Below the pieces are notes generated by a model. That model searched no databases. It was not told where the DNA came from and saw only the letters and a program-made list of their open reading frames with translations. 64,000 nt of DNA from Perna viridis (Eukaryota). How positions within the stretch are numbered: position 1 is the first letter of the stretch; each line of letters opens with the position of its first letter. Shown here in pieces: positions 36,411 through 62,910 of this stretch. The translations under genes and the position numbers were made by a program. The stretch is from positions 16,182,001 through 16,246,000 of the forward strand of contig CM074522.1 in assembly GCA_037379345.1 (NCBI GenBank). The letters are read 5' to 3'.

Positions 36411-36554
36411 ATGATGCAGTCCATGTGCAATGTAGATTTTTTTGTGATTTTTATTTTTGCGTTTTTGACTTTTGAGTGTGTAGCAAAAGTGAATGATTAC
36501 ATGAACTCAGAGGATTTAGCTGACAGTTTCCCTAATTTGAGTGGAAATGATGAG
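36411..36554 (+). CDS. C1QTNF12: FAM132-like gene exon 1 (signal peptide)
   Basis: MMQSMCNVDFFVIFIFAFLTFECVA-KVNDYMNSEDLADSFPNLSGNDE|gtaagc. Hydrophobic core with a CVA cleavage-like site; phase 0 fits the next exon. The link across the 16.5-kb intron is inferred. Confidence 0.68.
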
Positions 36555-42500: not shown

Positions 42501-45500
42501 CATACATGTAAGTAGAGTTTTAGGTGCAGGGTATCGTTTTACAAAGCTTACTTAAGACTTACGTGCACGTAAGTCCCATTGAGTATGTAAGCTTTGTGAG
42601 TTATTTGTGAAACGACGCGAGCAATCCTAAGAAAGACGTATCATTAACGCAGATTGCATTCTGTAATAAAATTTAAAAAAAAAAAAAAACTTCCATGTTT
42701 AATTGACTGTGACTCCATAAATATTCTTGTCAAAATATTACTTATTAAAACAAATAATTTGAAATTAAGCAAGTATCACATAACTTAACCATAAAAATGA
42801 AATATTTAATGCTCAAATAAGATTAATTTATATAATTAGTGAGAGCAAATTAATACGAATGTTTATCAATAATTGTATTAAAGCCTTCTTCGATCAATTC
42901 ATTCGGTGCATGTCTTACAATTTTCATTGCAGTAAAATAATTAATTTATGGTTTTAGCAACATCGTTGTAAAAGCTATATCATGAGAATATTAGAATCGA
43001 AATAAATCACGGAAACTCCATTTTATCATTGTTTGACCATAGACCCGTGGTCGAACAATAATAAAATGGAGTTTCCGTGATCTTTTTCAATTCTAATAGG
43101 ACAAGTTTCTTCGTATTTTTGAATAAGCGCAGCCTAAGAGTTGCACGATATGTTAGTCATGTGTTTATCACTTTTCACCAAGGTTGTGGTCTAATGAGCT
43201 TGGAGCACTTCATATTAGAATTAAGTTTTTACCTCCATAGTTCATTCGTAATTTTATTTTTTCAGAAAATGGAATGATTTCTTTCTATTTTTATGATTAT
43301 GGTAAAAAAATCGAACTTTGTGGCAATACATAACCAACAAGAATATGCACAAAACGGAAACGTGAAGACAGCAAGCAAAGTCATGGGAAAAAAAATAAGA
43401 GCAAGCTCCAAGCAGCGGCAGACACTCGTTTCATCTCTTACTAAAGTGAATTTCGAACGTCAAACGCTTTTCGGAGCTTGAAATAAGTAGTAGTTGTATA
43501 CCAAGAAACGAAAAAAGAATTCTGTAAGTTGTCTTTTGGAAATCAAAGAAATCGCTACAATTTACGTTGCGATTATTTGTCGTCGCGAATTCAGCAAAAA
43601 TAAAATTGTTTTCTGCACTGTAAGATTAGCGACCATGTTAACTGAGAAATATATGAAAAAAACAGGATATTTTACACGCTAACTAAGTAAGACAAGTTCA
43701 AAGATATGTGCATGTTCATTACCCCTGCCATACCAGGTGAGATTTTGGCGTACGCTAAAGATTAAAACATTTAAAGATGTGATTCGAGTAGTTCGTATAA
43801 ACAAACGGATAATAAAAAACACACACACAAGGGAGGAGGTATACTCAGACAAGTATTGTTTTAAACAAAATCGTATTTATGTATTGTTTTCCAATAGATA
43901 AAAGTATTCATAGAATATACATACTCTGATTTATGTATATATATAATGGCAATTTTGTAGAGGGATTCAAGTTTTGCTACTAATCGGAGGCGCCTAGTTG
44001 AATCACCGCGGCAATGGTTCAATACTGGGAGAAAACCATTATGTATCTGTCAAAAGTCCAAGCTGTGGCCAGAGAGGATACACTTAATGCAAGAAAAATG
44101 TAAAATTATAGAATGTCTTAAAAATTAACATCAATTTTTTGTATGTTAAATGCCGAAGTCTCACCCAATTCTGACTCGGGAACTTCGATGGCTCCACCAT
44201 TCAGAGCTCGTGCATAACCTTTTCTAAAGTCCTGGCGACGGGACATTAACATTATTGATTGCCGAGTGGAACAAGGCTCAAAATTTCGGGTGATAATTTT
44301 TCGAAAAAAACACGATTTTCTGCAAAAGTAAATATTGTTCCAATTTTTAGGAGAGTTGAGCGTCTCATCCAATCCCCTCTAAATCCACCACTGCTGGTGA
44401 CACAAGAGTAATAACTTTTTCATTTTACATAAAATGAAATTTAATTTAAGTTGTTATATCATTTGGGGGGCAATATAGATATAATATCGGACAATTTTAG
44501 AACAATTTCTGACAATTCTACTCCTCAGATAGTTACTATCAATTACATGTATATCCAAAAATATTTCTGGTAACTGATAGGCTATAAAATATCAGACAAT
44601 TAACGCCAGAATAGTTTCTGATAAGAACTTTCCCTGGATCAGATTCCACTGTAAAAAGGTTGAATACAGATCATGCAGTGACGAATCCAGAGGAGGGATT
44701 GAAACACCCCTTTGTTTGGAGTTTTTTAATTAAAATTAGGACAATATTGAGTAAATGTAAACTTGGAACCCTTTTTTATATAAATTTCTGGATCGGACAG
44801 CTTACTTTGATATATTTTTGGATGAACCCCTGTCATGCGCATTACTGTATACAATTATTATCTAGGACGACTTTGAAATTACGACATTAATTTACTCATC
44901 GACTTACAACAGCGATTGACTATGTACTAAATCAATGCATCGATCTAGCTTACTAACCCAAATAAAGAGATTATCAAGAATATCAGATTTCCGCATTCTC
45001 TTTGATTGCAAGGAAACGGTGATTGCCAAGGCCTTGACTCTGTTTAGAATGAAAAGAATTTGCAAATCATTCTGACAGTGATACGATGAGAGTAACACAA
45101 GAAAGAACTGGACTACGTGAACTGGACCGCTGTTCTAAATTGTTTTTGGTTTTTGGACGTATTAGAAAATTCTAAAATTTAAATTGAATGTATAGTAATT
45201 GCCATCCATAATTTTCTTTGATGTTTGAAGCGTATGTTTTTATAGCTGGTAACATGTGTAATTGGCTATAAAAATTGCAAATCGTGGCACAACCTACAAT
45301 CGAAGACAGCATGGACTTCAACGACCTATAGATAATTTTCTCCGCATATCTATAACCGCTTCCTGATCTACTATGTATCACTCGCTTGCTTAAAGTTTGT
45401 TTGTTTGTTTGTTGGGGTTTAACATCCGAGCAGCAATATTTCAGCTATTTTCAGACAATGAACATGAAATGGATGATAAAATGAACATGAAATGATAAAA

Positions 45501-48500
45501 AAAGGATGGGTCACAAGGATAATAGAGTCGACAAATTTTGATTGCCACTGGAAAAAGGGGGATGGGTACGGTCGGGCAATTTAGCCTCCTGTGGCGGAGC
45601 GCAAAGGTTCCTACTCCTATCGAAGACCACAGCAGGGTTCTTTAACGTGCGAGGAACGTGGCATTTTTCCCAACACGGTGCACCACTATGGTTTGCGGTC
45701 AGGTTTTCCGTATTATAGCCTGACAACCCCAGCATGTAACATGCCAGGGGTACCCCATTCCACCACCTGGGGCACACATCCCAGTTGCTCTGTGGGCAGA
45801 GCGCCTAGCCCCCGGCTAGGTTTCTGAGCACTATTTAGTCGCCTTTTACGACAAGCTTAGCGCTGCTGCAGGCCTATTCTTTTGACACCCGGACCTGCAC
45901 GGGGCGTTTGCTTAAAGACTCTGTTATAAACAATAGGGGAAAATCCCATGGCATGAGTACAACTCAACACTAATCCGCGAAGCTACTTCCTTTGTACTGT
46001 ACTTTTTTGGATAAAGAGGTGGGGTTAGGTACTGAAGTTAGCTTTGAAATAGCGAAAATGCCATCTCTGCCGGAGATATATGTTGCAAGGCGATGTACAT
46101 TATTTTCAAAAGGACAACCCCTTTATTTATTTACTTTTGTAAGGTACATTTACTAAACAAAATGCTTCAGGATAATTACATACAAATTATAAAGTAAATA
46201 GAAAAAACATATTTTTTCAAAACCTTTGGACGTCCGTGATTTATCCTTTTTGACGGATTTCTAAAAAAACTTCCCTACTGATTACGAATGATGTAATAAT
46301 TGTAAAACTACGTAAAATAACATAAAAAAATAGGATGTCGAGCCTCGCACGTAACACGTGAACAAATGTAAGAAACAAAATTCTTCGAAAAATATTTCAT
46401 AATAATTACATGCTTTAGGGTCAAGCAATATAATGAACGCTGGATACCTATGTTTTGAACGAAAATTTTGTTTCGTCATTTTTGTTTTCCACGTCTTCAA
46501 CTTTGATCTGTAACTAAATTGGTGCGACAAGGTGAATGATCAAAATCTTTATCCATTTTCCGTATTTTTTCTTTTCCGATTTTTATTGAATTTATTTTGC
46601 ACTTTCCGCGGCTAGTAGTCTTTTGGAATTTCGTTATGACCGATTGCTATATATGTAGTATATTGTATTTCTGTGCGAGTGAGAGGAGCTCTTTTATTAG
46701 CAGAGGACGCAGTCCTCAGAATAGTATTCAGTGCATGATAGAAGCACTGAGAGTCTGATTTCAGTCTCACAGAATGTTATGTCTTGTCGGAAATTTCCAT
46801 GCAGAGCAAGATGGTTTCATATCTTCTTCGTTTCAATTTATTCTGGTCTTCAATATTTGCTTAAATTTAGAGACTTTTTTCGTATCCTATATGCCATGAG
46901 AGTAAGCATTTCTGGCTGAATGGCTCTAGCCAGAAAGTACTTATTACAAATACCGGTCTCATTCATAAGCGACAAGAAGCATCAAGGGTTTAGAAGAGTT
47001 CGATGCGGTAGAACGAAATGCGTGAGGCACAGTTTGTATATGGACCGGACGTTTGCACAAAACCTACCATCTTCGTGAAGACAAATTCTACCATTCCAAA
47101 TATCTGTGCAAAATTAACTCATGACTGGATCAGAAAAAATAAGGATTTTAGAATACACTTTTAATTTGTAATGAAATTGTTTTAAATGTTTTGCAAGGTT
47201 GCTGCCTTCAACATGCATGTAATATCGGGTATCACAATTTTGATCTTCGCCCGGTTGCTCCCATTTCACCATTTAAAAAAACAAATATAGTGATTTACCT
47301 GCAGTTTGTCTGAATGTACCATTTGACCTCTTTTACAATCGGAAGCAGATATAAATATTTAGATTTTTTTCTTTATAGTGTGTTGTTTGCAGAAATTCAC
47401 GAACAGGAAGAAAAGTTCATTTTCCGGAATTGTAATGTTCATCCCATCACATTTAAAAAAATCGTACTATCAAGTAAAAGTTATTAATGAGTTAGACAGG
47501 AAATGCACATGGTTAGGAAAGGAAATAATCGTTATGTTTCAAATTCTTTATTTTACGCTCAATTCATTTTGAAAAAAATAAAAATATACAGAACCCGATT
47601 AATCGGAACACCGTGCACTCGATTTGTCGGCTAAGATTTTTTTGCCTTAACGTAGAGGTTATTATCTGACGAAGAACAAACTTGTGAGACCGAGAGTAGA
47701 TTTTTTTGTCACCCATTTACACGGCGTTCCTCTTGCAGTATTGGATGGGTCTGTGCTACAGACTTATCCAAGTGCTATATATATATTACTCCTTTATAAT
47801 TTTGTAATTAAGTTCACCAAAAGACCTTTTGTTATTAACCTTGACCAAATTATAGGACGTAATTTTATACAGGAATTACTGAAGGACTACTTTATTTTTT
47901 GAATAACGGAAATGTAAATACAAGGTTTAAAAACATGTTATCTTCCGGTTTTCTACAAGTACATAGACCCCCTAGCATTCCATTAACTTCGTCAAACAAA
48001 GGATGTGTCACGGAACGCAATATTAATACATGCAGTACAAACAGATGATAGCACAATTTGCGTGTAGCAACCTATAACCATCTATACACAGGAAGTTAAT
48101 TAAAAGCCATTAGCCAATCGGAGCCATTGTTACAAACTCAAACAATGGTCCGTTAAATCTGCAATCATTTTTCAAATCGACAAGAACAATGGCTGCTGTC
48201 AAAACGTAAACAAATTATGTTGCTACAAAGTACACTCGATTATTCGTTTGATTTAAATCGCAATTTTCAGGGTCACGGAAGTGTTTGATCGCAATCACTT
48301 AACTGGTAGATTATTTTATAATCAACACAATCGGGTACACCCAAGATTTCTGTTATTGTTCGGAAGAAAAAGATAAAAATCTTTATTTGGTGAATAACCG
48401 TTTAAACACAAGGGATTAGGTGTTGGATATCACAAGTTGAAAGAAACGAAGAATAAATGTGAAACAATTCGAATAAAAATTAAAAGAACTCTTGAACTTC

Positions 48501-51500
48501 TACAGTAACTTGTTTCGGATAATTATATTACTAGTATAAATGATAAATTATCTCCTCCGCAGAGGGTTCGATTCGCAAAATCAAAGCTTTTAGCCCTCTT
48601 GCAGAGCACACAGACTAACAGTTAAGTAAAAGCAGTTATAGATTTGTGGAGGACTCTGCTGACTGACGATAAGACTCACTCTCTTTGAAATTGCTGCTAG
48701 TAGAATAATTTATTACTGCTTAAAGTTCTATGATTCAAGTCCCACCATATGATCAATTCATACATGTAGCTATTCCTTATGTCATACACATGAATGCAAA
48801 TGGTGGCTTTAAGATACGATTACATGTAACTATACTACAAACGCGATGACTTGTCATTCCGTATCGTCAAATTTCCTTATGGCGTATGGAGTTTTCATAT
48901 GACAACTCGGACATTATGCCAGTGCTTGCCAAAACTGCGCGGACATTTTGTACCGTGCTAGACTTCTTATAATTAGGCTTCTGACAGGGTAATGTTACTT
49001 CAAGATTAAAGTCATCACTATACAAATCTTTTCTGGTCGTCATTATGAATTCGTGGATCGTTATCATGGTGTATCTATCAGCACCTTTAGAATCTATTTG
49101 TTCATCATGTCATAGTTTTACTTTCTTCTTTCGTCGAACCCGGACGAGACATTTTACTCATACTCTTCCGGTGCACCTGGTCCTAGATCCGAATTTTTTG
49201 CTCATTTACTTTGTTGTTTTGGTTTTTTATGTTTTATATTGTGTCTGTCTGTTTCCTCTGACTAGTCTCATTGGAATATAATCTTTTGATTATCGCTCGA
49301 TATTTCGTTCCCTTTGATTATTCTTTAACGACACTTCTGATATTTTTGTAAAGGTTCAAATACTTGTTCAAATTGTAACTAGTTTATGACACCAATCTCC
49401 TTCGGATTTTGAATATTGCTCACGACTCTTTTGATTCTACATGTATGATTACTTCGCAGTTTTGTTTGTAATTATTTGATTACTAGCACTTTACTATTAT
49501 AATTTATTTGCAAAAGTATATTACATCTAGAACAGGATATGATTACTAAAGAAAATACGTGTACTTTCTGATTACCAAAATACAGTTCAGAAAGAATATA
49601 CCATGACTTATCACTGACGTGGTGGTACACCACTCTCTTAGTGGTAACCCACAATTTTTGTTATCCAAATAGATAGTTCCCAATAATTTTGATATTTTGA
49701 ATAGCAGCAGCCCTTTTCACAAAAAATCGTAAGAGTAAAACTAGTAAGTTGTGATGTCACAATACTTGACTCTATTTTGACATCATAACTTACGACTAAT
49801 TTTACACTTACGACTTTTTGTGAAAAGGACCGCAGGTTATGCCCAACATCTTAAAAACAAAATGTAAGAAATCTTTAGAAATAACAATGTTATTGACCAC
49901 CACTCTAAGAGTGGTGTTTCACTATGTTGGTGATGAGCGACGGTATGTCTCTTTCTATACCATAAATATGTAATAAATATTTGATTTTATTAGTAGCATA
50001 TTGGTTATATTTTATTTCATGTATTACCTCCATATAAAGGTAATCCATTCTTGTGGCTTCAAATTTTCTCTTCTGCTTGGACGACAGAATGGACGTATAG
50101 GTCACTATTTTATTAATTTCGTCGCATGAATCGAAACTTAAAGATACATTATATAAGATCACTTACTTCATTACATCAGAATTTGAGTGTCGAAATAATT
50201 TTAATATTTATTTCATTTTCCTAGCAGGAAGCAATGTCACGCTTTCAAAATCTGAAAATGCTTTTGGTTTCAAACTTAAATTCTTAATTCAAATTTTAAA
50301 TTTTTAAGCACGACGACGTTCTCGTTATTTTTTTTTTAAGTTAATGCGAATATGTTCACAACAAATACTGCAAGACACTTTCTTACTTTCAATTTAATTT
50401 GATAGGTATTATGTGATACTCTCCGAAAAGTTGAGTGTCCGTCCCTCCTTGTGTCGACGCTCTCCCGATGATAGCCTGAGAACGGATTACTTTTTGTAAA
50501 CTTTGCACAGTTGTTCAGTTGTTAAGTACAATAAAATACAGATTAGGTTCAATTTTCAGAAAAAAAATTAAAAATGTAGTTTTCGAGTTTCGAATTTCGA
50601 AAATTTTGCCTTTCTCCTTTTTTCCACCATTACGAGGCGGGGTTTGACTTAATGTTCCATTAATGCCATATTTGTTTAATTTCGAATTGTAAATTCTCCA
50701 TTTATTCTTCTAATCTATATAATTTTCATTTCAAAAATCAATTTTAATTGTCCTGTTTGTAAAAAACTTCATTGATAAAATGATATCCCTCATTATATAC
50801 TAACAAATTTGTTTGAATAACCAGTTTTGTGCAACCATCCAAACCGTAGGTAATATAAAATGTGTAATATTGCAGAACTGTTCGTAATTCTCCGAATTCC
50901 ATCAAATATTTCTAAATCCTTGACCCTTATAGAAATAATTAAGGTATATTAACATTAATTGCCATTGCGCGATCTACAAATCATAAAAAAATAATAACTT
51001 TATTAATGGAGTCAGCTGCAAACCTAACACGTGGCGAGATTATACTGATATTTGTAATAACGGGGCAATTGCAAAAAAGATCAGCACGTGATGTTACCTC
51101 TTCAAACAGTGGAGGATCCTGAAATTTAGAAAAGAGGCCTTGTTGTCAAGCGGGGGGGGGAGGGTTTCAAGTGATTTTCAGTTTTTCTATAGACTATTAA
51201 TCAGACTTTTTGATCATATAGGAGAGGCTTCCCCCTTTTGGACCCGCTCATCGTATATATGTTTGGCTAAGGTTTTAGCTTATTAAGGTTAGAGGTCAAA
51301 GTAGAATGGTAATCGGCAGGTGGTACAATTCTTACACAGTATATTCGTATTAGTTTATTCGCTATTTCAAAGATTTACACCTCATTTACACTCAGTGCTA
51401 AACCCCGCCGTTTTATGCAAATTAGTACAGTACAACGGAAGTAGTTCGACTGTACCAAAGCTTATTTAAGGTACAAAAATCATAGTAAAAATTACATCAT

Positions 51501-54500
51501 CATAATCATATATTACACTCATGCTATGTATAAAGCTAATCCGGGATAGTGTACATTGTTTTAATCATATTTGTTTCTCGAAAGAATAGTACACTTGATC
51601 TTACTTCGGTAATTTGAAAACTATAAAACCTGGCTAATTAAAGTAAAAGACTAATTTTCCAGACTTTGAAGAAAATCATTTGATTTCAAGGTCATTCTAC
51701 TTTTGTCTTCACTGATTCAGCATTTTCATTTAAAGTCCTTCCACATATTAGAATTTAATCACTAATCAATGAAAAATCGGTAAAGTTTTCTATCAAGATA
51801 ATATAACCTTTTCATTAGGCTAATTTGAAATAAAACTGCATGAAACTAAATAAGAGTGGTATTTGGAAGATAAAATTTGTAAAATTAAAGATTCATATTT
51901 ATGATTACACGAGAAAGTAACAAGTGTTTCTGGTTAGCGGAATATTAAAGATCAGTGAAAAATAATGTAATAGAAAATGATAGATACTTAAATTTTCTTT
52001 GATTAATTGAGTAAAATGTATATTTTCCCCCGCATGAGAAGATAGCAAATTTATCAGTAGGATGGGCGCCTTACTATCATAGAAAATTGACAAGTTTTAG
52101 TCCAACCTAAGAAATTATCCCAGCATGATAGTGGGGTTTTGGCCGGCAGGGGAGTGCAATCGATTCACATTCATGTATACAAAATCTATCTTTGATAAAT
52201 AAAAATCTTGAACGATTTAAAGAATTTGGAGCATGTGATACTGAATTGTTTAAAAGAGATTGGGTCAGATGACAAATTGCAATCATTTTTTCATTTGATA
52301 ATACCATTGAAAAAAGCCTTAATTATTCCCAATCTGACATGAAATTTAGCTTACTTCTACCCCCTCAGCTAATCGGCCAATTATTTAGTACTTCACTCCT
52401 GGAGCAAAATTGGCTTTCATCTTTGAAGTACTTTTACCCGTTGCTATCGACGTTGAAAGGCTATATTGTTCCGAAGGTGAAAAATGAGAGAAAAGATGGA
52501 AAGAGATATGTCTGGAAAAGGTCTTTGTGTCCTAGTATAAATACATGTATTTTAAGTGGAGGTCTCTATGTAAAGTTATTGCCTTAAGTCATAGATACTG
52601 GACTGAATCAATTAATGAATTTCGGTAGAAAATGTTTTTCAAGGGGCTGTAAAATCGGATACCGAAATATGGTCGCACGTAAAGCCACTTATTCAGTGTT
52701 TAGAAAGCAGCTTGTGCGACACAAATAAGAGGTGACAAAATAAGTCATAAAAATAAAATTTTGGACAAAGATACACGGTGCGACAATGTTATATTCCAAC
52801 TTTGTGGCTGGTGACGATGTATTTAACCACCTTGACACTACTTCGATTGCTATGTATTTTTTTTCATACGAAATCAGCTGTTAAAACAAAATATAACATA
52901 CCTTAATTTCAATGATTCTAAAGTGCTGATAGTGTTAGCACAATAGACCGTGTTAACTGTTGAATATTCGATCAGGATGCGTGGAGCATGCTCAATATTC
53001 ACTTCCGTGCGGAAAATTCTGTTGTTCTACCCAAGCCCCAACTCGCGGAATTGTAAATTTAACACGAAACGGTCTATTATTGTTTCAATACTTTTCAGGA
53101 ACTTGAAGATGTACGACGAAAAGCTGTAGATGCCAAAGACAGTTGGATTACGTTTGTCAGACATTCCAAAAGACCACAAAATAACAGGCAACCGCGAAAA
53201 CGAAAGGATAAGAAGAGTAAACGATTGGCTTGTTCACATGTAAGTTATATAAAATTTTTGTAATAAAACACGGTTTAAACGAAATCGTTATTTCAAAAGT
53301 CAGTTGACAGACAAAACTGTAAAAATTGAAACAACGAACACAATACAAAATTGAGAAAAACGCCAAATTATGATCAATCCAGACTATACAACGAACAAGA
53401 TACATTTGCACAAATGCGAGAAAAATTATAACAAACTTGGCTTACACCAACAACACACATGCACTGTTATGGTATTGCAAACAGATATATATATATATAT
53501 ATATCTGTTTGCAATACCATAACAGTGCATGTGTGTTGTTGGTGTAAGCCAAGTTTGTTATNNNNNNNNNNNNNNNNNNNNNNNNNNNNNNNNNNNNNNN
53601 NNNNNNNNNNNNNNNNNNNNNNNNNNNNNNNNNNNNNNNNNNNNNNNNNNNNNNNNNNNNNNNNNNNNNNNNNNNNNNNNNNNNNNNNNNNNNNNNNNNG
53701 TCAAAATTGAAGAAGCTAGAACAAACCGAGACGATTGACGGATGTATATTACAAATATTGTTTTTAAAAAAAATCTACTGATTTCATTTGCAGTCACATT
53801 TACATGATAATTGTAGCAGAGATTTGATTTCGTGAACTAAATGAACGATGTTTAATTGTATCTAATTTCTTGTATAGGGTTGTGTACCTGGTCCAGCTGG
53901 ACCTCGAGGCCCACCCGGACCCCCGGGACCCGCAGGGGCAGCTATAACGAAAGAAATGTTAATGGACGAATTTAAGGAACTCGTTCGAGGTAGGTCTTGA
54001 CTATAAATGTTTGGATTCATGTTTATGCTTATTGAAACAAGATGGACAGACTGTGAAAAAATGAAGATTGAAAGTATGACCTGACCCTCAATACTTATTT
54101 TTCCTTTTAAAAATATACTGGCATTCAAACGAAGAACAAAAAAATAAGTCGTTAACTGAAATAACATTCAAAGTCTTTCTTCGCCTATAGTATAAGTCAT
54201 GCAGTCGTTTCAGTAAATGTGGTATATCCTCTGGCATTCATCTTTCATTTGTAAGACCAAGCCCAATTCTATCTGTCAAAAATTTTAGTATTATACGCCA
54301 ATTGATACTTTACCATGCAATTGGTCATCGAGATTGTTTTGTGATTTAACTGGCCCATCAATTTTACTAGCCGCAATCTTTGGTCCAGTGGTTCATTCTA
54401 GTACTATCCACTGTGAGGTTGTCCTTGATTAAAGTTCTATCATCTACCAAAATGTTAGTCGAAAGAAAAATAACTTCGTTGCACAGTCTGCAAAATAAGC

Positions 54501-57500: not shown

Positions 57501-60500
57501 GTTGTAATAGGTAATCCATACAAGCAGCAGATTTATCAATTATCTCTTAACATCTCAATCAATTCTCGTCGAACATCAATTCCAATCGTTAAAACATAAG
57601 ATGAGAACATCGTCAATACTGATAAAAAGGCGAGATAGCGGTCTGTTCGATTAGCATTTTACAAAGCACAATACAGGTAATAAAATATACGAACAGAGGT
57701 TTATTCGATTAGTATTTTATATCGTTCAAGACAGGTAAATACAGATGTTCTCGTCTTTATTTGTCTATTACAGAGGGAATATTGTCTGTCATCTTTTCGC
57801 TAACTAGACGAGATTCTGTTACATTTTTAATTTATTTCCCAGACAAAGGCATTCAACTTCTTGTCAAAATGTGTTGATTTTACGTGTTCCTGTTCGTTTA
57901 GAATTTCATTTTTGAAGTTTGAGATACAAAAATGCCATTCAAACACACCTTGTAGATATTGCTTTATTGCAATGGTATGCTAATTAGTTTACCCCTAAGT
58001 ATCGGTTATGATAAATATTGCTGTTAACGCAGCATGCCTTTATAATGTACTGAAAGTTACTACAGTTGTATGTTATCTAAGGTAGACGGTAGTGTAAGTC
58101 AGGCGCGGGTACAGAAATTTACAAATGAGGTAGGGGAGTGATTTGCTCAGTTTTGCTGCGTTTTTGTATACAAAGTTTTCTAACAAAATTATAAAAAAAC
58201 GGAAGAGTGGTTCAAATCCCCAGAATCCTCTTTCTGAACCCTCTTCTACGTTGGTGCTGGATGCTGGGAGATGTGTTGAAAATTATGTTTATTTCACTTT
58301 TTTGACAAAATAATTACCTGAAACCACCCCTTTCTTACATATAGGATACGCAACTAGAGTCACCGGAATAAGTAGTTATATATTTTGAACTTTGGCGAAA
58401 GATTAATAGAATATTCAAAAAGTTAAAACAATTCTATCTACAAAAAACAATTGCCGTTCCCCCTTTTGTGCCTTATCACCCCATGTTCCGTTTAATGAAT
58501 TATGTTGTAAATATTAAAAAAAATAAATCTTAAGGATTTAGGTAAGGGACACAACTCACACAAATCATTGGAACGTTTGTATTTACCATTTAACATAAAT
58601 TCCATGTAAGCATCAAAGTAAGTTGGACTGATTTCATTCTGTTTCAAATGAATGCTTTAGAGGCTTTCGTAAAATTTAATGTGATACAACCATATCACTG
58701 ATTTCAAGAGTTATGTTCCTTACCCTAGGTCTACCTCCTTAAACAATACAAACATTAGAACGCTGTATCTTTGTTTATTTTTAAACTCTTAGACTGAGGC
58801 AAAAGAAGGTATAGAATGATGCAAATATTAGCTTCAGTAAGGCTCAAATTCCAAGCATGGTTTTTTGAAAATGGAATTATTTTACCTGATCCACAAAAAA
58901 TATATAAGAGCGATCATAAATTTTGCACTTTACTTCTTTCTGTAGTAGAATCTAAATAAAAACTCTTGTACTGAAAGAAAGATGCAATTAATTTTTACAC
59001 ATAGATCAAATACCAAACTGGTTACCTGTTTCCTTTTATCATTAGTTAATGAGCGTCAGGTATCAGGGTCGATACGGATGTTGGCAAAGCATTCTGGTCG
59101 CGTGTTGCAACGATTCTTAGGTCAAAGGTCATTTCATTATCTTCATGTTGTATGTCTACCGCATACGCATGGTTTTTACACGTGTCGAATGGCAGAAAAA
59201 ATTGCTGTACCAGAGTTCGAACAGAGCTAACAAGCTTGGTTATTTTTTTTTAAACTGTAGATTTCATGTTAATGATGTGAGGCATGGTGTTTAAAGTGTT
59301 AATTAGTGCCCTAACGTACTATTGAGAATTCTCCAAACCAAAACCGCTCGGTATAATTACATATTTTAATCACGATAGTTAAGTACTATTACACTATACA
59401 CTAGAGCCATCCCTTTATTAATCTTAATTTGTATCTTACGTCAATTTCTGTGGATACATTCAGTACATTTCTTGGTTTCTTTGGTAACAATATTTTTTTT
59501 TTAAATTCAACAACACTAACAAAAGGATTACAAAAAATGACCTAAAAGACAATTCTATATTTTAGAGGCTGCAGAAAAACGTGTTCAAGAATTAATAGCA
59601 GAAAAGGTACGTTAAACTACTCTAAAGTAAAACTCACTGCATGCCTACCCACGTCATACTACTCTAAAGTAAAACTCATTGCATGCCTACCCACGTCATA
59701 CTACCCTAAAGTAAAACTCACTGCATGCCTACCCACGTCATACTACTCTAAAGTAAAACTCATTGCATGCCTACCCACGTCATACTACTCTAAAGTAAAA
59801 CTCACTGCATGCCTACCCACGTCATACTACTCTAAAGTAAAACTCATTGCATGTCTACCCGTCGCGTTTTCTTTCTTTTTATAAAAATGTCTTCACTTTT
59901 GGTAATTTAACTCGACAATTAAAGCAATGTAGTCTCCAATTCGGAAACCTGATTTCAATTTCAAAGAAGCCTAGTATTTTTCACACCTGTTCTATTCCTT
60001 CAATGTTCTCAGAATAAGTAGTCATTGTCTTCCCAGAAGAGAATTTTCTGCTTTCACCTGCACAATCATGAACCGTTGGTATTGAAGTTGTAAGTTAAAT
60101 GTATAATTATTAACGAGCACATTAATTAGTTAAACTGATAACGAGGAAGGACAAACAAATCAATACATGCATAGTGGTGAAGGTTTCAACATAATTTATT
60201 GAAACTTCCATCGGATGTAATGAACTGACTCACAGACGAATCTGAAGACGGGCTGATTCCAACGCTTCAAAAAATAAACTTGTGATGTATACTTTTTCTT
60301 TGTTTTCCAGTGTCCAAATTGTGTTGACAACTTAAACAACACAAACAGCATACCTCTACCAACTACTGGTGGTGTTTTCGATTCTGTTACCAGGGTAACG
60401 GTTGGCTTCAACATGCGCATGCGCAGAAATGTTGCAATTTCGGGTAGAACATTTATGGAACTCAGTTCATTCCATCAGGTAAGGAAACTCAACTTTGATA

Positions 60501-62910
60501 AAGGGTTCTGTTTCCTATTTTAAATTCCAAATATCGTGTTCATGTATAGCATTAAATTTTGTTTTCACGTTTTAATACTTAATGCATTTGTTGTAATTTC
60601 GAATTCTAATTTCCAATTGCACTGTTGGACTCTAAATTTTTTTAATGTGCATGTGCAATCAAATTAAATTTGCGACCATTCAATGCACGATTGACACCGC
60701 TAAAGATCCATAAACATTGCACGGTAATCTCCTATGGGAAGGAACAATAACGATCCCACGAAATCAGAGAAAAAACACAACATACACAGTAAAAATAACA
60801 ACAACAAATAACAATAAAAAAAACAGCAAACAACAGACAAAAATACACCAAAAAAACACAAAAAGAAAAAAAACAACTAACAACAAACAAAAAAGAAACC
60901 GCTAAAGTACCACATACGCGCATATTAAACTAAAAAAAATGGGCGTGAATTAATTCTGCTTCGGGTCATTCGCAGTTGTCTCTCTCTTGACTCATTCGTC
61001 GTTGTTACCTGAACACACGACCACACAGATAAAATTTCAACATATTTTTATAGCCATTCAATGCCGGATCTTTTAACAGAGGAGAAAATTTTAATATAAG
61101 AAATGGACGTTTTGGAGCACCAAAGAGTGGCATATACCAATTTTCTGTAAATCTCCATATCAGGATTAAAAGGAACGGTAGAAAGCTAAAACTCAGGAAA
61201 AGAGATAACATTAGGACGCAGATCTGTATAGATTCATTGTGTCAAAAGTATACGTAAGTAATTACTATATGTATTTGACTTTTGACCTAAAAATATACTT
61301 CAACAAATAAATATTCACATACTCTTTTGGACCATGTTTTAGATTTTTTTTCTATCGGGACTATCGCTTCAGGGTAATGAATACAATTATTTGCAAGCAA
61401 ACTCATGACGCTGTTAAGATACAATTTGAATTCAGATAGTCATACTAAAAGAGTTTGCGTTGTAATTCTTTTACATCTATCTCAGGTACTTTCATTTTAT
61501 ACGTATCGTATATTTCTTCAAGTTCGTTGACCCCTACAGAGGACTTTAGCCGAAGGAATTTTAGTAATGCACTCTATTCGTTCGTCGATCAATCTGGTAA
61601 ATTAGTATTCCGTACTTGCAGATATTTACTTGATATATGGTTTATTGCTTTACCATGATAAGTTAAAGGATCAAGTTTGTCTTTTTTACAAATTCATTCA
61701 TTATTTTTTGTTGAGTTATGCCCTTGGAGTAATGCATAAAAGAACTCAGTTTTCCAAACATTTTTTCGTTTACAAATTATGCATAAATTTTGTTTCTATT
61801 CTTAACTACATATTATTCTTCGGGTAGGTGACTTTATATTGTCAAGAAAGAGTCTCAGAATGCTTTTTTAAATAGGTGTTCAGGAGCAGATCCAAGAATT
61901 TATAAGTTCGGTCTAGAAATGTTTTATGGGAAGTTTCCGGCGATCATATTATTTTTTCACTTCGATTCTTGTCGAAACATGTCGCAACTCGGCTTATCTC
62001 CCGCTCTGAGAAAATTTAGAATGAAATTCCTCGCCTTAGAAATTTCGAAGGTTAACAAATACATGCATGCACGATGCCCTTTCTTTACGATATTTGTTTT
62101 TATTCCAGATCATTACAACATATCTCGGGTTTAGAAAGTAACAGTAAATTTTTCACAGTGAGCTTTATGGGATTTCTGGAATTATCGGTAATTATACATT
62201 ATTTTATTGACTTTGTTAAGAAATACAGTAAAAACGTCTTAACCAAACCCCTTTTTTGAACTTTAAAATTGGTTCAGTTTAGACAGGTGTTCGGTTTACC
62301 AAGGTTTAACGTACATTTATTAGCCTGATCGTGTGTTACTATAGTACTATTGCATGGTTTTCCATATTGGCTTAGTTATTGGTCCGATGCTAGCCATATT
62401 GGATTGAGGCGCAGCCGAACTCAGGCAATATGGAAAACCATGATATGCAATTATACTAACTAGCCCAATACGTTATATTGGCCTAGGCCAATATGGATTT
62501 TAACCAGGCCAATATGAAGTATTGGTAGGGTAAAATCCGTATTGGACGGCTAAATCCCGTATTGGCACACTTATGTATTTTGCATTGTATTGGCAGTTTT
62601 GATCATATTTAGGATGATATTCGAACGTTATTCAATAATTCGGCGTATCACCTTCTACTGCAGGAAATATGTATATAATGACATACTGTATAAAAAGTAA
62701 ATTGCATGACCCTAAAAGGTTTCCGTAACTTATATCAAATCCTGTTGGATATGATATTTCCCCTTACTTTTTCAAATAAGAAACTGAAGTACAGCTGTAT
62801 TTTTTTTTCAGGCTGGACAATACACATCAGTATATGTCGATAATGCTTCAAGGAACAATGTTATAATTCAAACAACATCAGACTTTAGTGGTGTCTTGGT
62901 AGGTTTGTGA
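36411..62910 (+). CDS. C1QTNF12: Adipolin/erythroferrone-like secreted C1q/TNF-related protein (FAM132 family; 327 aa, 8 coding exons)
   Basis: join(36411..36554,53099..53239,53878..53989,59566..59606,60311..60478,61054..61253,62109..62187,62812..62910) = 984 nt, GT-AG, in frame. Features in order: signal peptide; DAKDSWITFVRH; polybasic tract; (GXY)6; ITKEMLMDEFKELVREAAEKR; C1q head with GRFGAPKSGIYQFSVNLH, ICIDSLCQ, SGLESNSKFFT, AGQYTSVYVDNAS, SDFSGVLVG. These match adipolin motifs as I recall them (WLNFVRR, EFQELLKEATERR, GRFTAPVSGIFQFS, ICIESLCQ, SGLESNSRVFT, AGQYASVFVDN, FSGLLLG). Likely co-orthologous to C1QTNF12 and ERFE, so the symbol is provisional. Confidence 0.88.
41124..41455 (+). 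mobile_element. tRNA-derived SINE (V-domain type)
   Basis: B-box GGTTCGATG near 41173; ttggcttggagtcggaataatatgtccgagtg...gcggactgttgcttctgtgaacta resembles the V-SINE domain as I recall it; (CAAT)n-like tail; flanking direct repeat AACAAGAG. Confidence 0.6.
42039..42412 (-). mobile_element. 3'-UTR-only fragment of the Penelope-like element with four 38-bp terminal repeats
   Basis: Matches 541-803. The terminal unit agagtaatcaagggaaccaaggttatagtggtaatcaa is repeated about 4 times at 42039-42190. Confidence 0.85.
42988..43099. repeat. Long imperfect hairpin (foldback remnant)
   Basis: Arms tattagaat..aaa..aatcacggaaactccattttatcattgtttgacca / tggtcgaacaataataaaatggagtttccgtgat..ttt..attctaata. 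Confidence 0.85.
45395..45904 (-). mobile_element. GC-rich SINE-like non-autonomous retroelement with (AAAC)n tail and 12-13-bp TSD
   Basis: TSD cgcttgcttaaa (45383-45394) / cgtttgcttaaa (45905-45916); (GTTT)n on + strand = 3' tail; internal GCACGTTAAAGAACCC...TTCGATAGGAGTAGG on the - strand. Confidence 0.78.
48830..49326 (+). mobile_element. Degenerate second copy of the Penelope-like element (RT end plus 3' UTR)
   Basis: Translates with frameshifts as YYKRDDLSFRIVKFP..YGVFI*QL..YASACQNCADILYRARLL..RLKSSLYK..GRHYEFVDRY. It is followed by ccggtgcacctggtcc...ttccctttgattattc, homologous to the reverse complement of 541-760. Confidence 0.72.
49708..49832. mobile_element. PIF/Harbinger-type MITE with CAG TSD
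   Basis: TIRs ccttttcacaaaaaatcgtaag / cttacgactttttgtgaaaagg; CAG on both flanks. Related ends at 42527-42620. Confidence 0.65.
53099..53239 (+). CDS. C1QTNF12: FAM132-like gene exon 2 (conserved W motif and polybasic tract)
   Basis: ttttcag|ELEDVRRKAVDAKDSWITFVRHSKRPQNNRQPRKRKDKKSKRLACSH|gtaagt. Confidence 0.88.
53428..53561. repeat. Perfect 134-bp palindrome centred on (AT)n, abutting the assembly gap
   Basis: ataacaaacttggcttacacc...gcaaacag(at)n ctgtttgc...ggtgtaagccaagtttgttat, then N run. Confidence 0.9.
53562..53699. other. Assembly gap (N run) in intron 2 of the FAM132-like gene
   Basis: Run of N. Confidence 1.
53878..53989 (+). CDS. C1QTNF12: FAM132-like gene exon 3 (collagen-like segment)
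   Basis: gtatag|GCVPGPAGPRGPPGPPGPAGAAITKEMLMDEFKELVR(E)|gtaggt. Confidence 0.92.
56115..56324 (+). mobile_element. TTAA-specific MITE (Kolobok-type), copy 2
   Basis: TTAA-GGAGGTTGACCTATAGTAAGGGACA...TGTCCCTTACCCTAGGTCAATCTCC-TTAA: ~25-bp TIRs with a TTAA TSD. Confidence 0.82.
56434..56771. mobile_element. TA-flanked MITE (GGG...CCC ends); partial copies at 8301-8410 and, inverted, at 57400-57460
   Basis: TIRs TAgggtttgtaagtctcgt / acgaaacttacatacccTA; the left end recurs at ~8300. Confidence 0.72.
57133..57275. repeat. Inverted repeat with a duplicated arm
   Basis: ttgctcccactatcaaatatgcag is followed by two reverse-complement copies, ctgcat(g/a)tttgatagtgggagcaa. Confidence 0.8.
58534..58738 (-). 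mobile_element. TTAA-specific MITE (Kolobok-type), copy 3, inverted
   Basis: Reverse complement of 56115-56324; TTAA at 58530-58533 and 58739-58742. Confidence 0.8.
59566..59606 (+). CDS. C1QTNF12: FAM132-like gene exon 4 (41 nt)
   Basis: ttttag|(E)AAEKRVQELIAEK|gtacgt; phase 1 in, phase 0 out. Confidence 0.85.
59616..59861 (+). repeat. Minisatellite, 42-bp unit x6 (84-bp higher-order dimer x3)
   Basis: actactctaaagtaaaactca(c/t)tgcatgcctacccacgtcat at 59616, 59658, 59700, 59742, 59784 and 59826; C and T variants alternate strictly. Confidence 0.95.
60311..60478 (+). CDS. C1QTNF12: FAM132-like gene exon 5
   Basis: ttccag|CPNCVDNLNNTNSIPLPTTGGVFDSVTRVTVGFNMRMRRNVAISGRTFMELSSFHQ|gtaagg. Confidence 0.88.
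61054..61253 (+). CDS. C1QTNF12: FAM132-like gene exon 6 (C1q/TNF-like head)
   Basis: ttatag|PFNAGSFNRGENFNIRNGRFGAPKSGIYQFSVNLHIRIKRNGRKLKLRKRDNIRTQICIDSLCQKY(T)|gtaagt. Confidence 0.93.
62109..62187 (+). CDS. C1QTNF12: FAM132-like gene exon 7
   Basis: ttccag|(T)SLQHISGLESNSKFFTVSFMGFLELS|gtaatt; inside ORF 62074..62259. Confidence 0.93.
62335..62565. mobile_element. Palindrome-rich element remnant in intron 7 of the FAM132-like gene
   Basis: Repeated ccatattgg/ccaatatgg motifs; arms agta..ata.ttgcat..catggttttccatattg / caatatggaaaaccatg..tgcaat.atact around gaggcgcagccga. Confidence 0.5.
62812..62910 (+). CDS. C1QTNF12: FAM132-like gene exon 8 (terminal)
   Basis: ttttcag|AGQYTSVYVDNASRNNVIIQTTSDFSGVLVGL* (TGA). 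Confidence 0.93.
   Translation, partial: AGQYTSVYVDNASRNNVIIQTTSDFSGVLVGL

What the first reader, a model, noticed from the sequence alone, without database searches (positions are those of the whole stretch)
53126..53167. Conserved Trp motif (VDAKDSWITFVRHS) matching the ERFE N-terminal BMP-binding segment
Seen: VDAKDSWITFVRHS sits in an otherwise low-complexity N-terminus. From memory, ERFE has DPRDAWMLFV and adipolin has DAHMTWLNFVRR. Established: ERFE acts as a ligand trap for BMP5/6/7 through its N-terminal region, with a critical tryptophan. Inference: BMP antagonism may be the ancestral function of the family. That would make this a candidate undescribed secreted BMP regulator in molluscs, where BMP signalling is linked to shell-field and mantle biology.
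Basis: partly seen in the sequence, partly recalled or inferred. Interest (0 to 1): 0.8.

Follow-up and report, generated by a model that had tools for sequence, protein, structure and literature searches.

The report
Mollusc adipolin/erythroferrone gene, conserved Trp helix
The motif is real and lies in a transcribed exon of a single-copy gene that is the invertebrate counterpart of the vertebrate hormones adipolin and erythroferrone, and its tryptophan aligns with the one erythroferrone needs to trap BMP growth factors, so BMP binding is a reasonable but untested guess.

Summary
Observation confirmed. VDAKDSWITFVRHS is encoded at 53126-53167 (+), inside a 141-nt exon (53099-53239). Transcript contigs from two studies splice that exon to exon 1 and exon 3.

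The gene has 8 exons (36411-62910) and encodes about 327 aa: signal peptide, acidic stretch, W-x-x-F-V helix, cationic segment, six G-X-Y repeats, a second helix, a CPNC motif and a C1q domain. It is single copy in the 723-Mb genome.

Relatives were found using the C1q exon alone. They include named erythroferrone, named adipolin and invertebrate 'adipolin-like' proteins (bivalves, amphioxus, sea cucumber, scorpion, centipede, priapulid, a cnidarian). Nearly all with an intact N-terminus carry the same motif. In a 19-sequence alignment the motif Trp is one of only two invariant columns. A profile of the motif from 21 relatives hits only this exon in the six-frame window (E 2.4e-10).

The Trp and the Phe at +3 match ERFE W82 and F85, both experimentally essential for BMP inhibition. 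N94 is matched; D90 is Lys here.

In the tree, invertebrate genes are co-orthologs of adipolin and ERFE, not of either alone.

BMP binding was not testable here, because no multimer modelling or assay was available. Verdict: a new member of a known family. The BMP-trap hypothesis is well founded but unproven.

The parts
36411..36554 (+). Exon 1 (48 aa): start codon, hydrophobic signal-peptide-like core (FFVIFIFAFLTF), acidic stretch with an N-L-S glycosylation sequon. Donor GTAAGC. Followed by a 16.5-kb intron.
   Evidence: Found by a scan for ATG + hydrophobic core + phase-0 donor. Its last 30 nt are the loose end of transcript contigs that continue into exon 2. NLSGNDE|ELED parallels NLSTNEEELD of the Solemya ortholog P0002. 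The signal peptide is inferred; no predictor was run.
53099..53239 (+). Exon 2 (47 aa): the hydrophobic helix and the cationic segment (KRPQNNRQPRKRKDKKSKR), then the first Cys of LACSH.
   Evidence: Transcript contigs cover 53097-53240. Motif HMM E 2.4e-10. Unique in the genome.
53126..53167 (+). The flagged motif VDAKDSWITFVRHS. W (protein residue about 64) and F (about 67) correspond to ERFE W82 and F85. AlphaFold2 predicts a helix over exon-2 residues 12-23.
   Evidence: translation. (the W is one of two invariant columns in 19 family members). (helix 12-23, mean pLDDT 88 over exon-2 residues 11-20). PMC10692919 and PMC10772735 for the role of W82/F85.
53168..53224 (+). Cationic segment. 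Its end, DKKSKR, aligns with the DKKLR (KKXR) proprotein-convertase motif of vertebrate adipolin, and the whole segment with the ERFE cationic region 96-107.
   Evidence: Alignment A1. The KKXR furin site of CTRP12 at Lys-91 is described in PMC12913486. ERFE cationic region: PMC10692919. Cleavage here is inferred.
53878..53989 (+). Exon 3: a second Cys, six G-X-Y collagen-like repeats, and the start of helix H2 (ITKEMLMDEFKELVR). Ends in phase 1.
   Evidence: sequence, splice sites. Pfam Collagen E 8.6e-4, below the family cut-off. Its first 30 nt are the downstream loose end of the transcript contigs. tblastn to P0024 and P0073.
59566..59606 (+). Exon 4, a 41-nt mini-exon (EAAEKRVQELIAEK), the rest of helix H2.
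   Evidence: Found by an exhaustive scan of AG...GT candidates in the right phase. It matches REAAERRAQLLVQEN and REVATKRAEELVAAK of the orthologs. Not confirmed by reads.
60311..60478 (+). Exon 5 (56 aa): CPNC motif, linker, and the first strand of the C1q domain (VGFNMRMRRNVAISGRTFMELSSFHQ).
   Evidence: tblastn with P0001, P0002, P0003 and P0019. Sequence and splice sites.
61054..61253 (+). Exon 6: core of the C1q/TNF-like domain, with the family Cys pair CIDSLC.
   Evidence: Pfam C1q E 4.1e-7, 30.7 bits, above the 23.7 cut-off. phmmer against 1.84 billion representatives gave 121 hits, with adipolin/ERFE family members at the top. Sequence.
62109..62187 (+). Exon 7 (SLQHISGLESNSKFFTVSFMGFLELS).
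   Evidence: splice sites, phase. tblastn to orthologs.
62812..62910 (+). Exon 8 (AGQYTSVYVDNASRNNVIIQTTSDFSGVLVGL) plus the TGA stop.
   Evidence: tblastn to orthologs.

Best explanation
The motif is the ligand-binding helix (H1) of a secreted C1q/TNF-family protein. That protein is the single-copy, pre-duplication counterpart of vertebrate adipolin (C1QTNF12/FAM132A) and erythroferrone (ERFE/FAM132B).

Shown here:
- An 8-exon, roughly 327-aa gene, transcribed and spliced through the motif exon.
- The same module order as ERFE and adipolin: signal peptide, acidic stretch, W-x-x-F-V helix, cationic segment, six G-X-Y repeats, helix H2 with a conserved E-F, then the C1q domain.
- The motif Trp aligns with ERFE W82 and is invariant across the family. 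The Phe at +3 aligns with F85.

Inferred mechanism:
- The C1q domain, the short collagen stretch and the flanking cysteines assemble trimers or larger oligomers.
- Each chain presents an amphipathic helix whose Trp and Phe plug the hydrophobic type I receptor pocket (the W-x-x-W site) of a BMP-family dimer.
- This blocks receptor binding, and multivalency supplies avidity, as shown experimentally for ERFE.
- The polybasic segment ends in DKKSKR, which aligns with the adipolin KKXR furin site. It probably serves as a proprotein-convertase site that can detach the helix from the oligomerising body and so switch the trap off. It may also contribute charge-based avidity, as in ERFE.

Family membership is near certain. 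Homology of the motif to the ERFE binding helix is very likely. The BMP-trap activity is only moderately likely.
For: - Motif and exon.
- Splicing e1-e2-e3 in transcript contigs from two studies.
- Other exons, canonical splice sites and consistent phases, summing to 981 coding nt.
- C1q domain.
- Relatives were retrieved with the C1q exon only, so independently of the motif. They carry D-P-x-x-[ST]-W-x-x-F-V plus a basic cluster plus G-P-P-G.
- Names: erythroferrone (P0054, P0066, P0070, P0078), adipolin (P0031, P0015), adipolin-like from Branchiostoma, Holothuria, Centruroides, Priapulus, Mercenaria, Limulus and Clytia, a hypothetical protein from Solemya and a THD-domain protein from Strigamia.
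- Motif HMM hits only this exon, E 2.4e-10.
- In the 19-sequence alignment the only invariant columns are the motif W and one C1q Cys; D at -5 and F at +3 are at least 90% conserved.
- AlphaFold2 predicts a helix over the motif in the window peptide (residues 12-23, pLDDT 88) and in the Solemya ortholog (65-90). The latter also shows H2 and a confident C1q jelly roll.
- W82A and F85A abolish ERFE's BMP inhibition, the N-terminal fragment binds BMP2/6, and four conserved N-terminal segments occur in the same order: PMC10692919, PMC10772735.
- This genome encodes the presumed targets: at least 12 TGF-beta-family loci, including a BMP2-like ligand with WNDW (E 5e-50 to PDB 1rew).
Against: - No binding, docking or signalling test was possible. 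The BMP step rests on conservation of two residues that are essential in one fast-evolving vertebrate paralog.
- The other paralog, adipolin, keeps the same W-x-x-F-V but has no reported BMP activity. A 2026 review calls its receptor unknown and never mentions BMP (searches found nothing).
- ERFE D90, which has a minor role (about 2.5-fold), is Lys in this protein, a charge reversal. Only N94 of the two ancillary contacts is kept.
- If the DKKSKR site is cleaved efficiently, as in adipolin, the main circulating form would lack the motif.
- Exons 4-8 are supported by homology, splice signals and the share of words in RNA-like contigs, not by laid reads.
- Two raw RNA-seq runs showed no reads on exon 2.
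Confidence: 0.5

Rival explanations
1. This is an adipolin-type hormone and the motif has a non-BMP role. The protein acts like vertebrate adipolin/CTRP12, an insulin-sensitising, anti-inflammatory factor with an unknown receptor. The W-x-x-F-V helix sits in an N-terminal region that governs oligomer assembly, convertase processing or binding to a different partner. Cleavage at the polybasic site releases a globular form that does the signalling. BMP trapping would then be an ERFE-specific innovation that reused a pre-existing helix.
For: Databases name the invertebrate orthologs adipolin-like. DKKSKR aligns with the adipolin DKKLR furin motif just before the collagen stretch. Both have six G-X-Y repeats and 8 exons, as described for mouse CTRP12. 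Full-length and cleaved adipolin differ in oligomeric state and signalling (PMC12913486). No paper links adipolin to BMPs.
Against: The only function ever demonstrated for this helix in any family member is BMP binding. W and F are kept in both paralogs and in all invertebrate lineages sampled, within an otherwise fast-evolving disordered region. That pattern fits one shared ligand-binding role better than lineage-specific re-use. Absence of adipolin-BMP reports is absence of tests, not negative data. The adipolin effects reported via TGF-beta RII/Smad2 hint at a TGF-beta-superfamily connection.
Confidence: 0.33
2. The mechanism is the same but the ligand differs. The helix docks into the type I site of another TGF-beta-superfamily member of this animal (activin/myostatin-like, nodal, ADMP, TGF-beta-like), not into BMP2/4 or BMP5-8.
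For: The genome has at least 12 TGF-beta-family loci, several with a W-x-x-W pocket motif. The D90-equivalent is Lys here, which could retune specificity (describes the D90-K500 salt bridge in ERFE-BMP6). Adipolin effects have been linked to TGF-beta RII/Smad2.
Against: ERFE is the only tested member, and the papers read here tested it on BMP2, BMP6 and BMP2/6. Nothing here discriminates between ligands.
Confidence: 0.12
3. This is an ordinary molluscan C1q-domain immune lectin, or the motif match is a chance hit in low-complexity sequence.
For: Molluscs have hundreds of C1qDC genes. tblastn of the motif exon alone gives weak E-values (0.005 to 1).
Against: The motif profile gives E 2.4e-10, unique in the window. 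All eight exons are collinear with family members. The gene is single copy and not in a tandem array. The family-specific CIxSLC pair and the H2 helix are present.
Confidence: 0.02

Closest known systems
Erythroferrone (ERFE, FAM132B, CTRP15), a vertebrate BMP ligand trap
   Same: Same module order: hydrophobic helix H1 with W-x-x-F-V, cationic segment, short collagen stretch, helix H2 with E-F, then a C1q domain. W82, F85 and N94 equivalents are present with the same spacing (W, +3, +12). The helix is predicted at the same place.
   Different: It is not an ERFE ortholog. The vertebrate ERFE clade (99/96 support) excludes all invertebrate sequences. D90 is Lys here. The ERFE linker between H2 and C1q is longer. 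ERFE's furin site (RARR) lies upstream of the helix, whereas here the polybasic site lies downstream. The erythropoietin/hepcidin context is vertebrate-specific. BMP binding is untested here.
Adipolin (C1QTNF12, CTRP12, FAM132A)
   Same: Highest sequence similarity. The motif starts D-A, as in mammalian adipolin (DAHMTWLNFVRR). The DKK-x-R convertase motif sits directly before six G-X-Y repeats. Both have 8 exons, like mouse Ctrp12. The C1q domain carries CIxSLC.
   Different: The tree leaves vertebrate adipolin, vertebrate ERFE and the bilaterian invertebrate clade as an unresolved three-way split, so this is a co-ortholog of both, not adipolin proper. It has a CPNC motif after H2, shared with invertebrates, hagfish and coelacanth but absent from mammalian adipolin. 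Adipolin's receptor and the role of its W helix are unknown.
Invertebrate 'adipolin-like' predicted proteins (Solemya, Mercenaria, Branchiostoma, Holothuria, Centruroides, Limulus, Strigamia, Priapulus, Lingula, Clytia)
   Same: These are the true orthologs: same length (Solemya 329 aa against about 327), same motif, CPxC, and 62% identity over the C1q exon with Solemya.
   Different: They are computational annotations only; no functional study was found. Some models lack the W exon (Mercenaria P0008, Centruroides isoform X2). One unnamed invertebrate cluster (P0003) has the module duplicated in tandem.
Noggin and type I BMP receptors (works-like comparison only)
   Same: The proposed mode is insertion of a bulky hydrophobic side chain into the BMP W-x-x-W / type I pocket, a knob-in-hole contact, as the ERFE papers discuss for ALK3 F108 and for a noggin proline.
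   Different: There is no sequence or fold relationship. Here the binder is a short helix in a disordered region displayed on a C1q oligomer.

Membership tests
Adipolin/erythroferrone family (FAM132; C1QTNF12 + ERFE) | C-terminal globular C1q/TNF-like domain | tested here: met
   Pfam C1q on exon 6: E 4.1e-7, 30.7 bits against a 23.7 cut-off. Exons 5-8 are collinear with the C1q domain of family members. The ortholog model shows a confident jelly roll.
Adipolin/erythroferrone family (FAM132; C1QTNF12 + ERFE) | Family-specific Cys pair C-I-x-S-L-C inside the C1q domain | tested here: met
   CIDSLC in exon 6. The first Cys is one of the two invariant columns of alignment A1.
Adipolin/erythroferrone family (FAM132; C1QTNF12 + ERFE) | N-terminal hydrophobic helix D-[PA]-x-x-[ST]-W-x-x-F-V | tested here: met
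   E 2.4e-10; W invariant; helix, pLDDT 88.
Adipolin/erythroferrone family (FAM132; C1QTNF12 + ERFE) | Cationic segment followed by a short collagen-like stretch (about six G-X-Y) and helix H2 with conserved E-F | tested here: met
   Direct reading of exons 2-4. Alignment A1. The Pfam Collagen hit is only sub-threshold (19.5 bits against 27.2), as expected for six repeats.
Adipolin/erythroferrone family (FAM132; C1QTNF12 + ERFE) | Secretion signal | tested here: inconclusive
   Exon 1 begins M-M-Q and has a 12-residue hydrophobic core. No signal-peptide predictor was available.
Adipolin/erythroferrone family (FAM132; C1QTNF12 + ERFE) | Placement inside the family in a tree | tested here: inconclusive
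The window exons match best to P0001, P0002 and P0003, which sit in the bilaterian invertebrate clade.
Erythroferrone proper (functional BMP trap) | W82 and F85 equivalents (essential for BMP inhibition) | tested here: met
   W and F with i/i+3 spacing align to the ERFE residues. Their role in ERFE is from PMC10692919 and PMC10772735.
Erythroferrone proper (functional BMP trap) | Ancillary contacts D90 and N94 | tested here: inconclusive
   At +12 there is Asn (kept). At +8 there is Lys instead of Asp (not kept). In ERFE these mutations cost only 2.5- to 4-fold.
Erythroferrone proper (functional BMP trap) | Orthology to vertebrate ERFE | tested here: not met
   The ERFE clade (99/96) contains only vertebrate sequences. 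Invertebrate genes form a separate clade (87/85).
Erythroferrone proper (functional BMP trap) | Binds BMP ligands and lowers SMAD1/5/8 signalling | not testable with these tools
   Only single-chain AlphaFold2 was available, and no binding assay. Candidate ligands exist in the genome.
Adipolin proper (C1QTNF12) | KKXR proprotein-convertase site between the W helix and the collagen stretch | tested here: inconclusive
   DKKSKR aligns with DKKLR of adipolins and fits a K-x-K-R convertase pattern. Cleavage itself is not testable here (site described in PMC12913486).
Adipolin proper (C1QTNF12) | Orthology to vertebrate adipolin to the exclusion of ERFE | tested here: not met
   Adipolin, ERFE and the invertebrate clade form an unresolved trichotomy above a 93/88 node. 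Hagfish, an unnamed sequence and the cnidarian fall outside it.

The most novel reading that the evidence does not exclude
The W-x-x-F helix is an ancient ligand-binding module for the BMP/TGF-beta family that predates the cnidarian-bilaterian split and defines the whole adipolin/erythroferrone family. On that reading, this gene is an undescribed extracellular BMP antagonist of molluscs, switchable by convertase cleavage. Orphan vertebrate adipolin, whose receptor is still unknown, would act at least partly as a trap for TGF-beta-superfamily ligands.
Probability: 0.35. Interest if true: 0.8.

Novelty: new member of a known kind. Interest (0 to 1): 0.55.

Why it matters
Erythroferrone is the only member of this family with a known molecular mechanism, and that mechanism depends on one tryptophan and one phenylalanine in a short helix.

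This work shows that the same helix, with the same two residues, is the most conserved feature of the whole family. The Trp is one of only two invariant positions from a cnidarian to mammals, and the helix is present in the expressed, single-copy gene of this animal.

That turns two open questions into direct experiments:
- What does adipolin/CTRP12 bind? A 2026 review still lists its receptor as unknown.
- Do invertebrates have a C1q-type BMP antagonist alongside noggin, chordin and the like? In molluscs such a regulator would bear on dorsoventral patterning and shell-field biology.

If the answer is negative, the helix has another ancestral role that ERFE co-opted, which would also be informative.

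For annotation, the result shows that gene models of this family easily lose the motif exon. Here the first intron is 16.5 kb, and the Mercenaria RefSeq model starts after the motif.

Tried and rejected
- Pfam on the motif exon alone gave no family. The segment is not covered by any Pfam model, so a custom profile was built.
- tblastn of single orthologs against the motif exon gave only weak E-values of 0.005 to 1. These were not used as evidence on their own.
- An initial exon 3 to exon 5 join did not fit the reading phase. Alternative donors and acceptors were rejected once the 41-nt mini-exon 59566-59606 was found.
- An upstream ORF, MKFSLLL... at 52339, was considered as exon 1. It was rejected because the transcript contigs join exon 2 to 36523-36554.
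- Raw RNA-seq runs X21 and X22 gave no reads on exon 2, so there is no information on expression level or tissue.
- The PDB holds no solved relative of ERFE by sequence.
- Literature searches for adipolin-like, for adipolin/CTRP12 with BMP or ligand trap, and for CTRP12 with hepcidin found no functional link.
- The Lymnaea 'adiponectin' paper concerns a different C1q protein and only lists a Lingula adipolin accession.
- The earlier-findings look-up returned only this same finding.
- Steps left out:
Exons were searched one by one by reference, and the Solemya ortholog P0002 served as the full-length proxy.
  - The N run 53562-53699 was kept out of the read-laying stretch and was not filled.
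  - The large word-index protein search was not used, because the family was already clear.
Full report
**1. The observation.**
- window:53126-53167 on the + strand translates to VDAKDSWITFVRHS.
- It lies in a 141-nt stop-free stretch, 53099-53239, bounded by an AG acceptor and a GTAAGT donor, in phase 0 at both ends. This stretch encodes 47 residues: the motif, then a polybasic stretch (KRPQNNRQPRKRKDKKSKR), then LACSH.
- Contigs of two RNA-like public runs from different studies (X1: 3289 nt; X2: 1552 nt) align to 53097-53240 only.
- Their unaligned flanks equal the last 30 nt of a candidate exon 1 (36523-36552, a unique match in the window) and the first 30 nt of the next exon.
- So the motif exon is transcribed and spliced as modelled.
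- Two raw RNA-seq runs sampled at 19-24% had no reads on it, so nothing can be said about level or tissue.
- I kept the N run at 53562-53699 out of the laid stretch and did not fill it.

**2. The gene.** Splice signals, reading phase and tblastn with relatives give eight exons on the + strand:

| Exon | Coordinates |
|---|---|
| 1 | 36411-36554 |
| 2 | 53099-53239 |
| 3 | 53878-53989 |
| 4 | 59566-59606 |
| 5 | 60311-60478 |
| 6 | 61054-61253 |
| 7 | 62109-62187 |
| 8 | 62812-62910 (includes the stop) |

- The coding length is 981 nt, or 327 codons. All splice sites are canonical.
- Junctions e1-e2-e3 are confirmed by transcripts. Junctions e3 to e8 rest on homology and phase. They also fit the 14-18% share of sampled words that 17 RNA-like runs hold of 60311-62910, where exons make up 21% of the stretch.
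- Reading along the protein:
  - a hydrophobic N-terminus (a signal peptide, inferred);
  - an acidic stretch with an NLS sequon;
  - the W-x-x-F-V motif (W about 64, F about 67);
  - the cationic segment;
  - two cysteines flanking the start of six G-X-Y repeats;
  - a helix ITKEMLMDEFKELVREAAEKRVQELIAEK;
  - CPNC;
  - a linker;
  - a C1q domain (Pfam C1q E 4.1e-7, above the cut-off) containing CIDSLC.
- The gene is single copy in the 723-Mb, 46-contig assembly. The motif exon has one match in the genome, and the C1q exon has one further, weak generic C1q hit.
- I did not build a joined protein or send one to any tool. Exons were searched separately by reference.

**3. Relatives, found without using the motif.**
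- I searched the 66-residue C1q exon against 1.84 billion representative proteins and obtained 121 hits.
- Among the shorter, single-domain hits, most full-length proteins carry D-P-x-x-[ST]-W-[ILMF]-x-F-V, then a basic cluster, then G-P-P-G-P-P-G.
- Database names:
  - Erythroferrone: Mastomys, Balaenoptera, Ictidomys, Myotis, several teleosts, a frog.
  - Adipolin: Marmota, Lissotriton, Denticeps, hagfish.
  - Invertebrate 'adipolin-like' or unnamed proteins: Solemya velum and Mercenaria (bivalves), Branchiostoma, Holothuria, Centruroides, Limulus, Strigamia, Priapulus, a nematomorph, and the cnidarian Clytia.
- A count used only the family Cys pair for selection. Of 40 representatives long enough to have an N-terminus, 25 have W-x-x-[FWL] plus a basic cluster.
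- Of the other 15:
  - two have the W motif with a weaker basic stretch;
  - one starts in the middle of the motif;
  - most of the rest have obviously foreign or mispredicted N-terminal exons;
  - two (a nematomorph and an unnamed sequence) lack both motif and collagen.

**4. Is the Trp the ERFE Trp?**
- A profile HMM of the segment was built from 21 relatives, without the window. It finds only exon 2 among 2971 six-frame segments of the window (37.6 bits, E 2.4e-10; next best E 0.71). It aligns the window W to the profile W.
- A MAFFT alignment combined 18 full-length family members from cnidarian to mammals with the window exon. Its only invariant columns are this W and one C1q cysteine. 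D at -5 and F at +3 are at least 90% conserved.
- In named ERFE sequences the spacing W, F(+3), D(+8), N(+12) reproduces human W82, F85, D90, N94.
- The window has W, F, K and N at those positions.
- AlphaFold2 with this alignment predicts a helix over exon-2 residues 12-23 (AKDSWITFVRHS), the most confident part of the peptide (mean pLDDT 88 for residues 11-20).
- In the Solemya ortholog it predicts helix 65-90 over the motif, a second helix 123-149, and a confident C1q jelly roll.

**5. What is established for ERFE.**
- Srole et al. 2023 (PMC10692919):
  - They define four conserved N-terminal segments in this order: hydrophobic 81-86, cationic 96-107, collagen 109-125, helical with F136.
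  - W82 is the only invariant residue of the hydrophobic segment among vertebrate ERFEs.
  - W82A or deletion of the segment abolishes hepcidin suppression.
  - W82A weakens binding to BMP2, BMP6 and BMP2/6 and speeds dissociation.
  - W82 is modelled between the two tryptophans of the BMP W-x-x-W motif.
- Mast et al. 2023 (PMC10772735):
  - They call the helix the ligand-binding domain.
  - W82A and F85A each remove almost all BMP inhibition.
  - D90A costs about 2.5-fold and N94A about 4-fold.
  - The helix is modelled in the type I receptor site.
- Neither paper mentions adipolin or invertebrates.

**6. What is established for adipolin.**
- A 2026 review (PMC12913486) describes mouse Ctrp12 as an 8-exon gene.
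- Its protein has a signal peptide, an N-terminal domain with a KKXR endopeptidase motif, six G-X-Y repeats and a C1q domain.
- Furin cuts at Lys-91, and the cleaved globular form predominates in blood.
- The two forms differ in oligomeric state and signalling, and the receptor is unknown.
- The word BMP does not occur in that review. One reported pathway is TGF-beta RII/Smad2.
- In alignment A1 the window's DKKSKR aligns with the adipolin DKKLR.

**7. Phylogeny.**
- I built a careful maximum-likelihood tree of the C-terminal 215 residues of 35 representatives, rooted on the cnidarian.
- It gives a vertebrate ERFE clade (99/96), a vertebrate adipolin clade (94/92) and a bilaterian invertebrate clade (87/85) that includes the bivalves. 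The three join in an unresolved split.
- Hagfish and an unnamed sequence fall outside.
- So the invertebrate gene is a co-ortholog of both vertebrate hormones. The label 'adipolin-like' reflects the slower evolution of adipolin, not specific orthology.
- Rows left out: multi-domain hits over 600 aa, fragments, and the window itself.

**8. Mechanism proposed.**
- Shown: architecture, expression, homology of the helix, and conservation of the two residues essential in ERFE.
- Also shown: candidate ligands exist in this genome. There are at least 12 TGF-beta-family loci. One is BMP2-like, with E 5e-50 to PDB 1rew and a WNDW motif. Several others also carry W-x-x-W.
- Inferred, in three steps:
  - The protein is secreted and oligomerises through the C1q domain, the collagen stretch and the cysteines.
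  - Each chain offers the amphipathic helix to the type I pocket of a BMP-family dimer.
  - Multivalency gives avidity, and cleavage at the polybasic site would release the helix and weaken trapping.
- I put family membership at about 0.95, homology of the motif to the ERFE ligand-binding helix at about 0.9, and BMP-family binding at about 0.45-0.5.

**9. Rivals.**
- The main rival: the helix has a different ancestral role (assembly, processing or another partner), and ERFE alone became a BMP trap. This fits the lack of any adipolin-BMP report. But that lack reflects missing tests rather than negative data.
- A second rival keeps the mechanism but changes the ligand within the TGF-beta superfamily. 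The Asp-to-Lys change at +8 could matter there.
- Chance similarity, or an ordinary immune C1qDC protein, is excluded.

**10. Novelty and score.**
- The gene is a new member of a known family whose invertebrate orthologs are already auto-annotated.
- What appears not to be in the searched literature is this: the ERFE ligand-binding helix is the family's most conserved element, it is shared by adipolin, and it reaches back to cnidarians.
- That makes the BMP-trap hypothesis for adipolin and for invertebrate members directly testable.
- It is still a hypothesis, so interest is moderate (0.55).
- The organism was not identified.

Noticed in passing
window 59609-59860: A 42-bp unit repeated 6 times (95% matches) starts three bases after the donor site of the 41-nt mini-exon 4. 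In one frame it reads as a repeated SKVKLTACLPTSYY peptide, but it is intronic in the model.
   Followed up: partly
window about 53421-53561, next to the N run 53562-53699: A near-perfect palindrome, with arms of about 60 nt around a (TA)n core, abuts the assembly gap in intron 2. It could be a hairpin-forming element or an artefact at the gap edge. The gap was not filled or looked up.
   Followed up: no
P0003 and cluster members P0122-P0125 (unnamed invertebrate transcripts): These orthologs carry two tandem copies of the W-x-x-F-V plus cationic module (DPKASWISFVRQ... and DPRGSWFSFVRH...). This suggests the module is a self-contained functional unit whose copy number can change.
   Followed up: partly
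P0008 (Mercenaria adipolin-like), P0126 (Centruroides isoform X2): These public gene models begin at the cationic segment and lack the W exon. Given the 16.5-kb first intron seen here, they may be truncated annotations rather than real isoforms.
   Followed up: no
window 36555-53098: The first intron is 16.5 kb long and separates the signal-peptide exon from the motif exon. No other convincing coding feature was seen in it, or in 1-36400, by a simple ORF listing.
   Followed up: partly
L004-L015 (own genome, other contigs): The genome has at least 12 TGF-beta-family mature-domain loci. L004 is BMP2-like with WNDW. L008 looks like a BMP5-8 type whose first Trp lies in an upstream exon. L014 carries an in-frame TAG inside the domain.
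   Followed up: partly
P0110 (Clytia hemisphaerica adipolin-like): The cnidarian member keeps the Trp but has Trp instead of Phe at +3 (DPKETWAVWQKS) and lacks a clear G-X-Y run. So the Trp predates bilaterians, while the rest of the module is looser there.
   Followed up: partly
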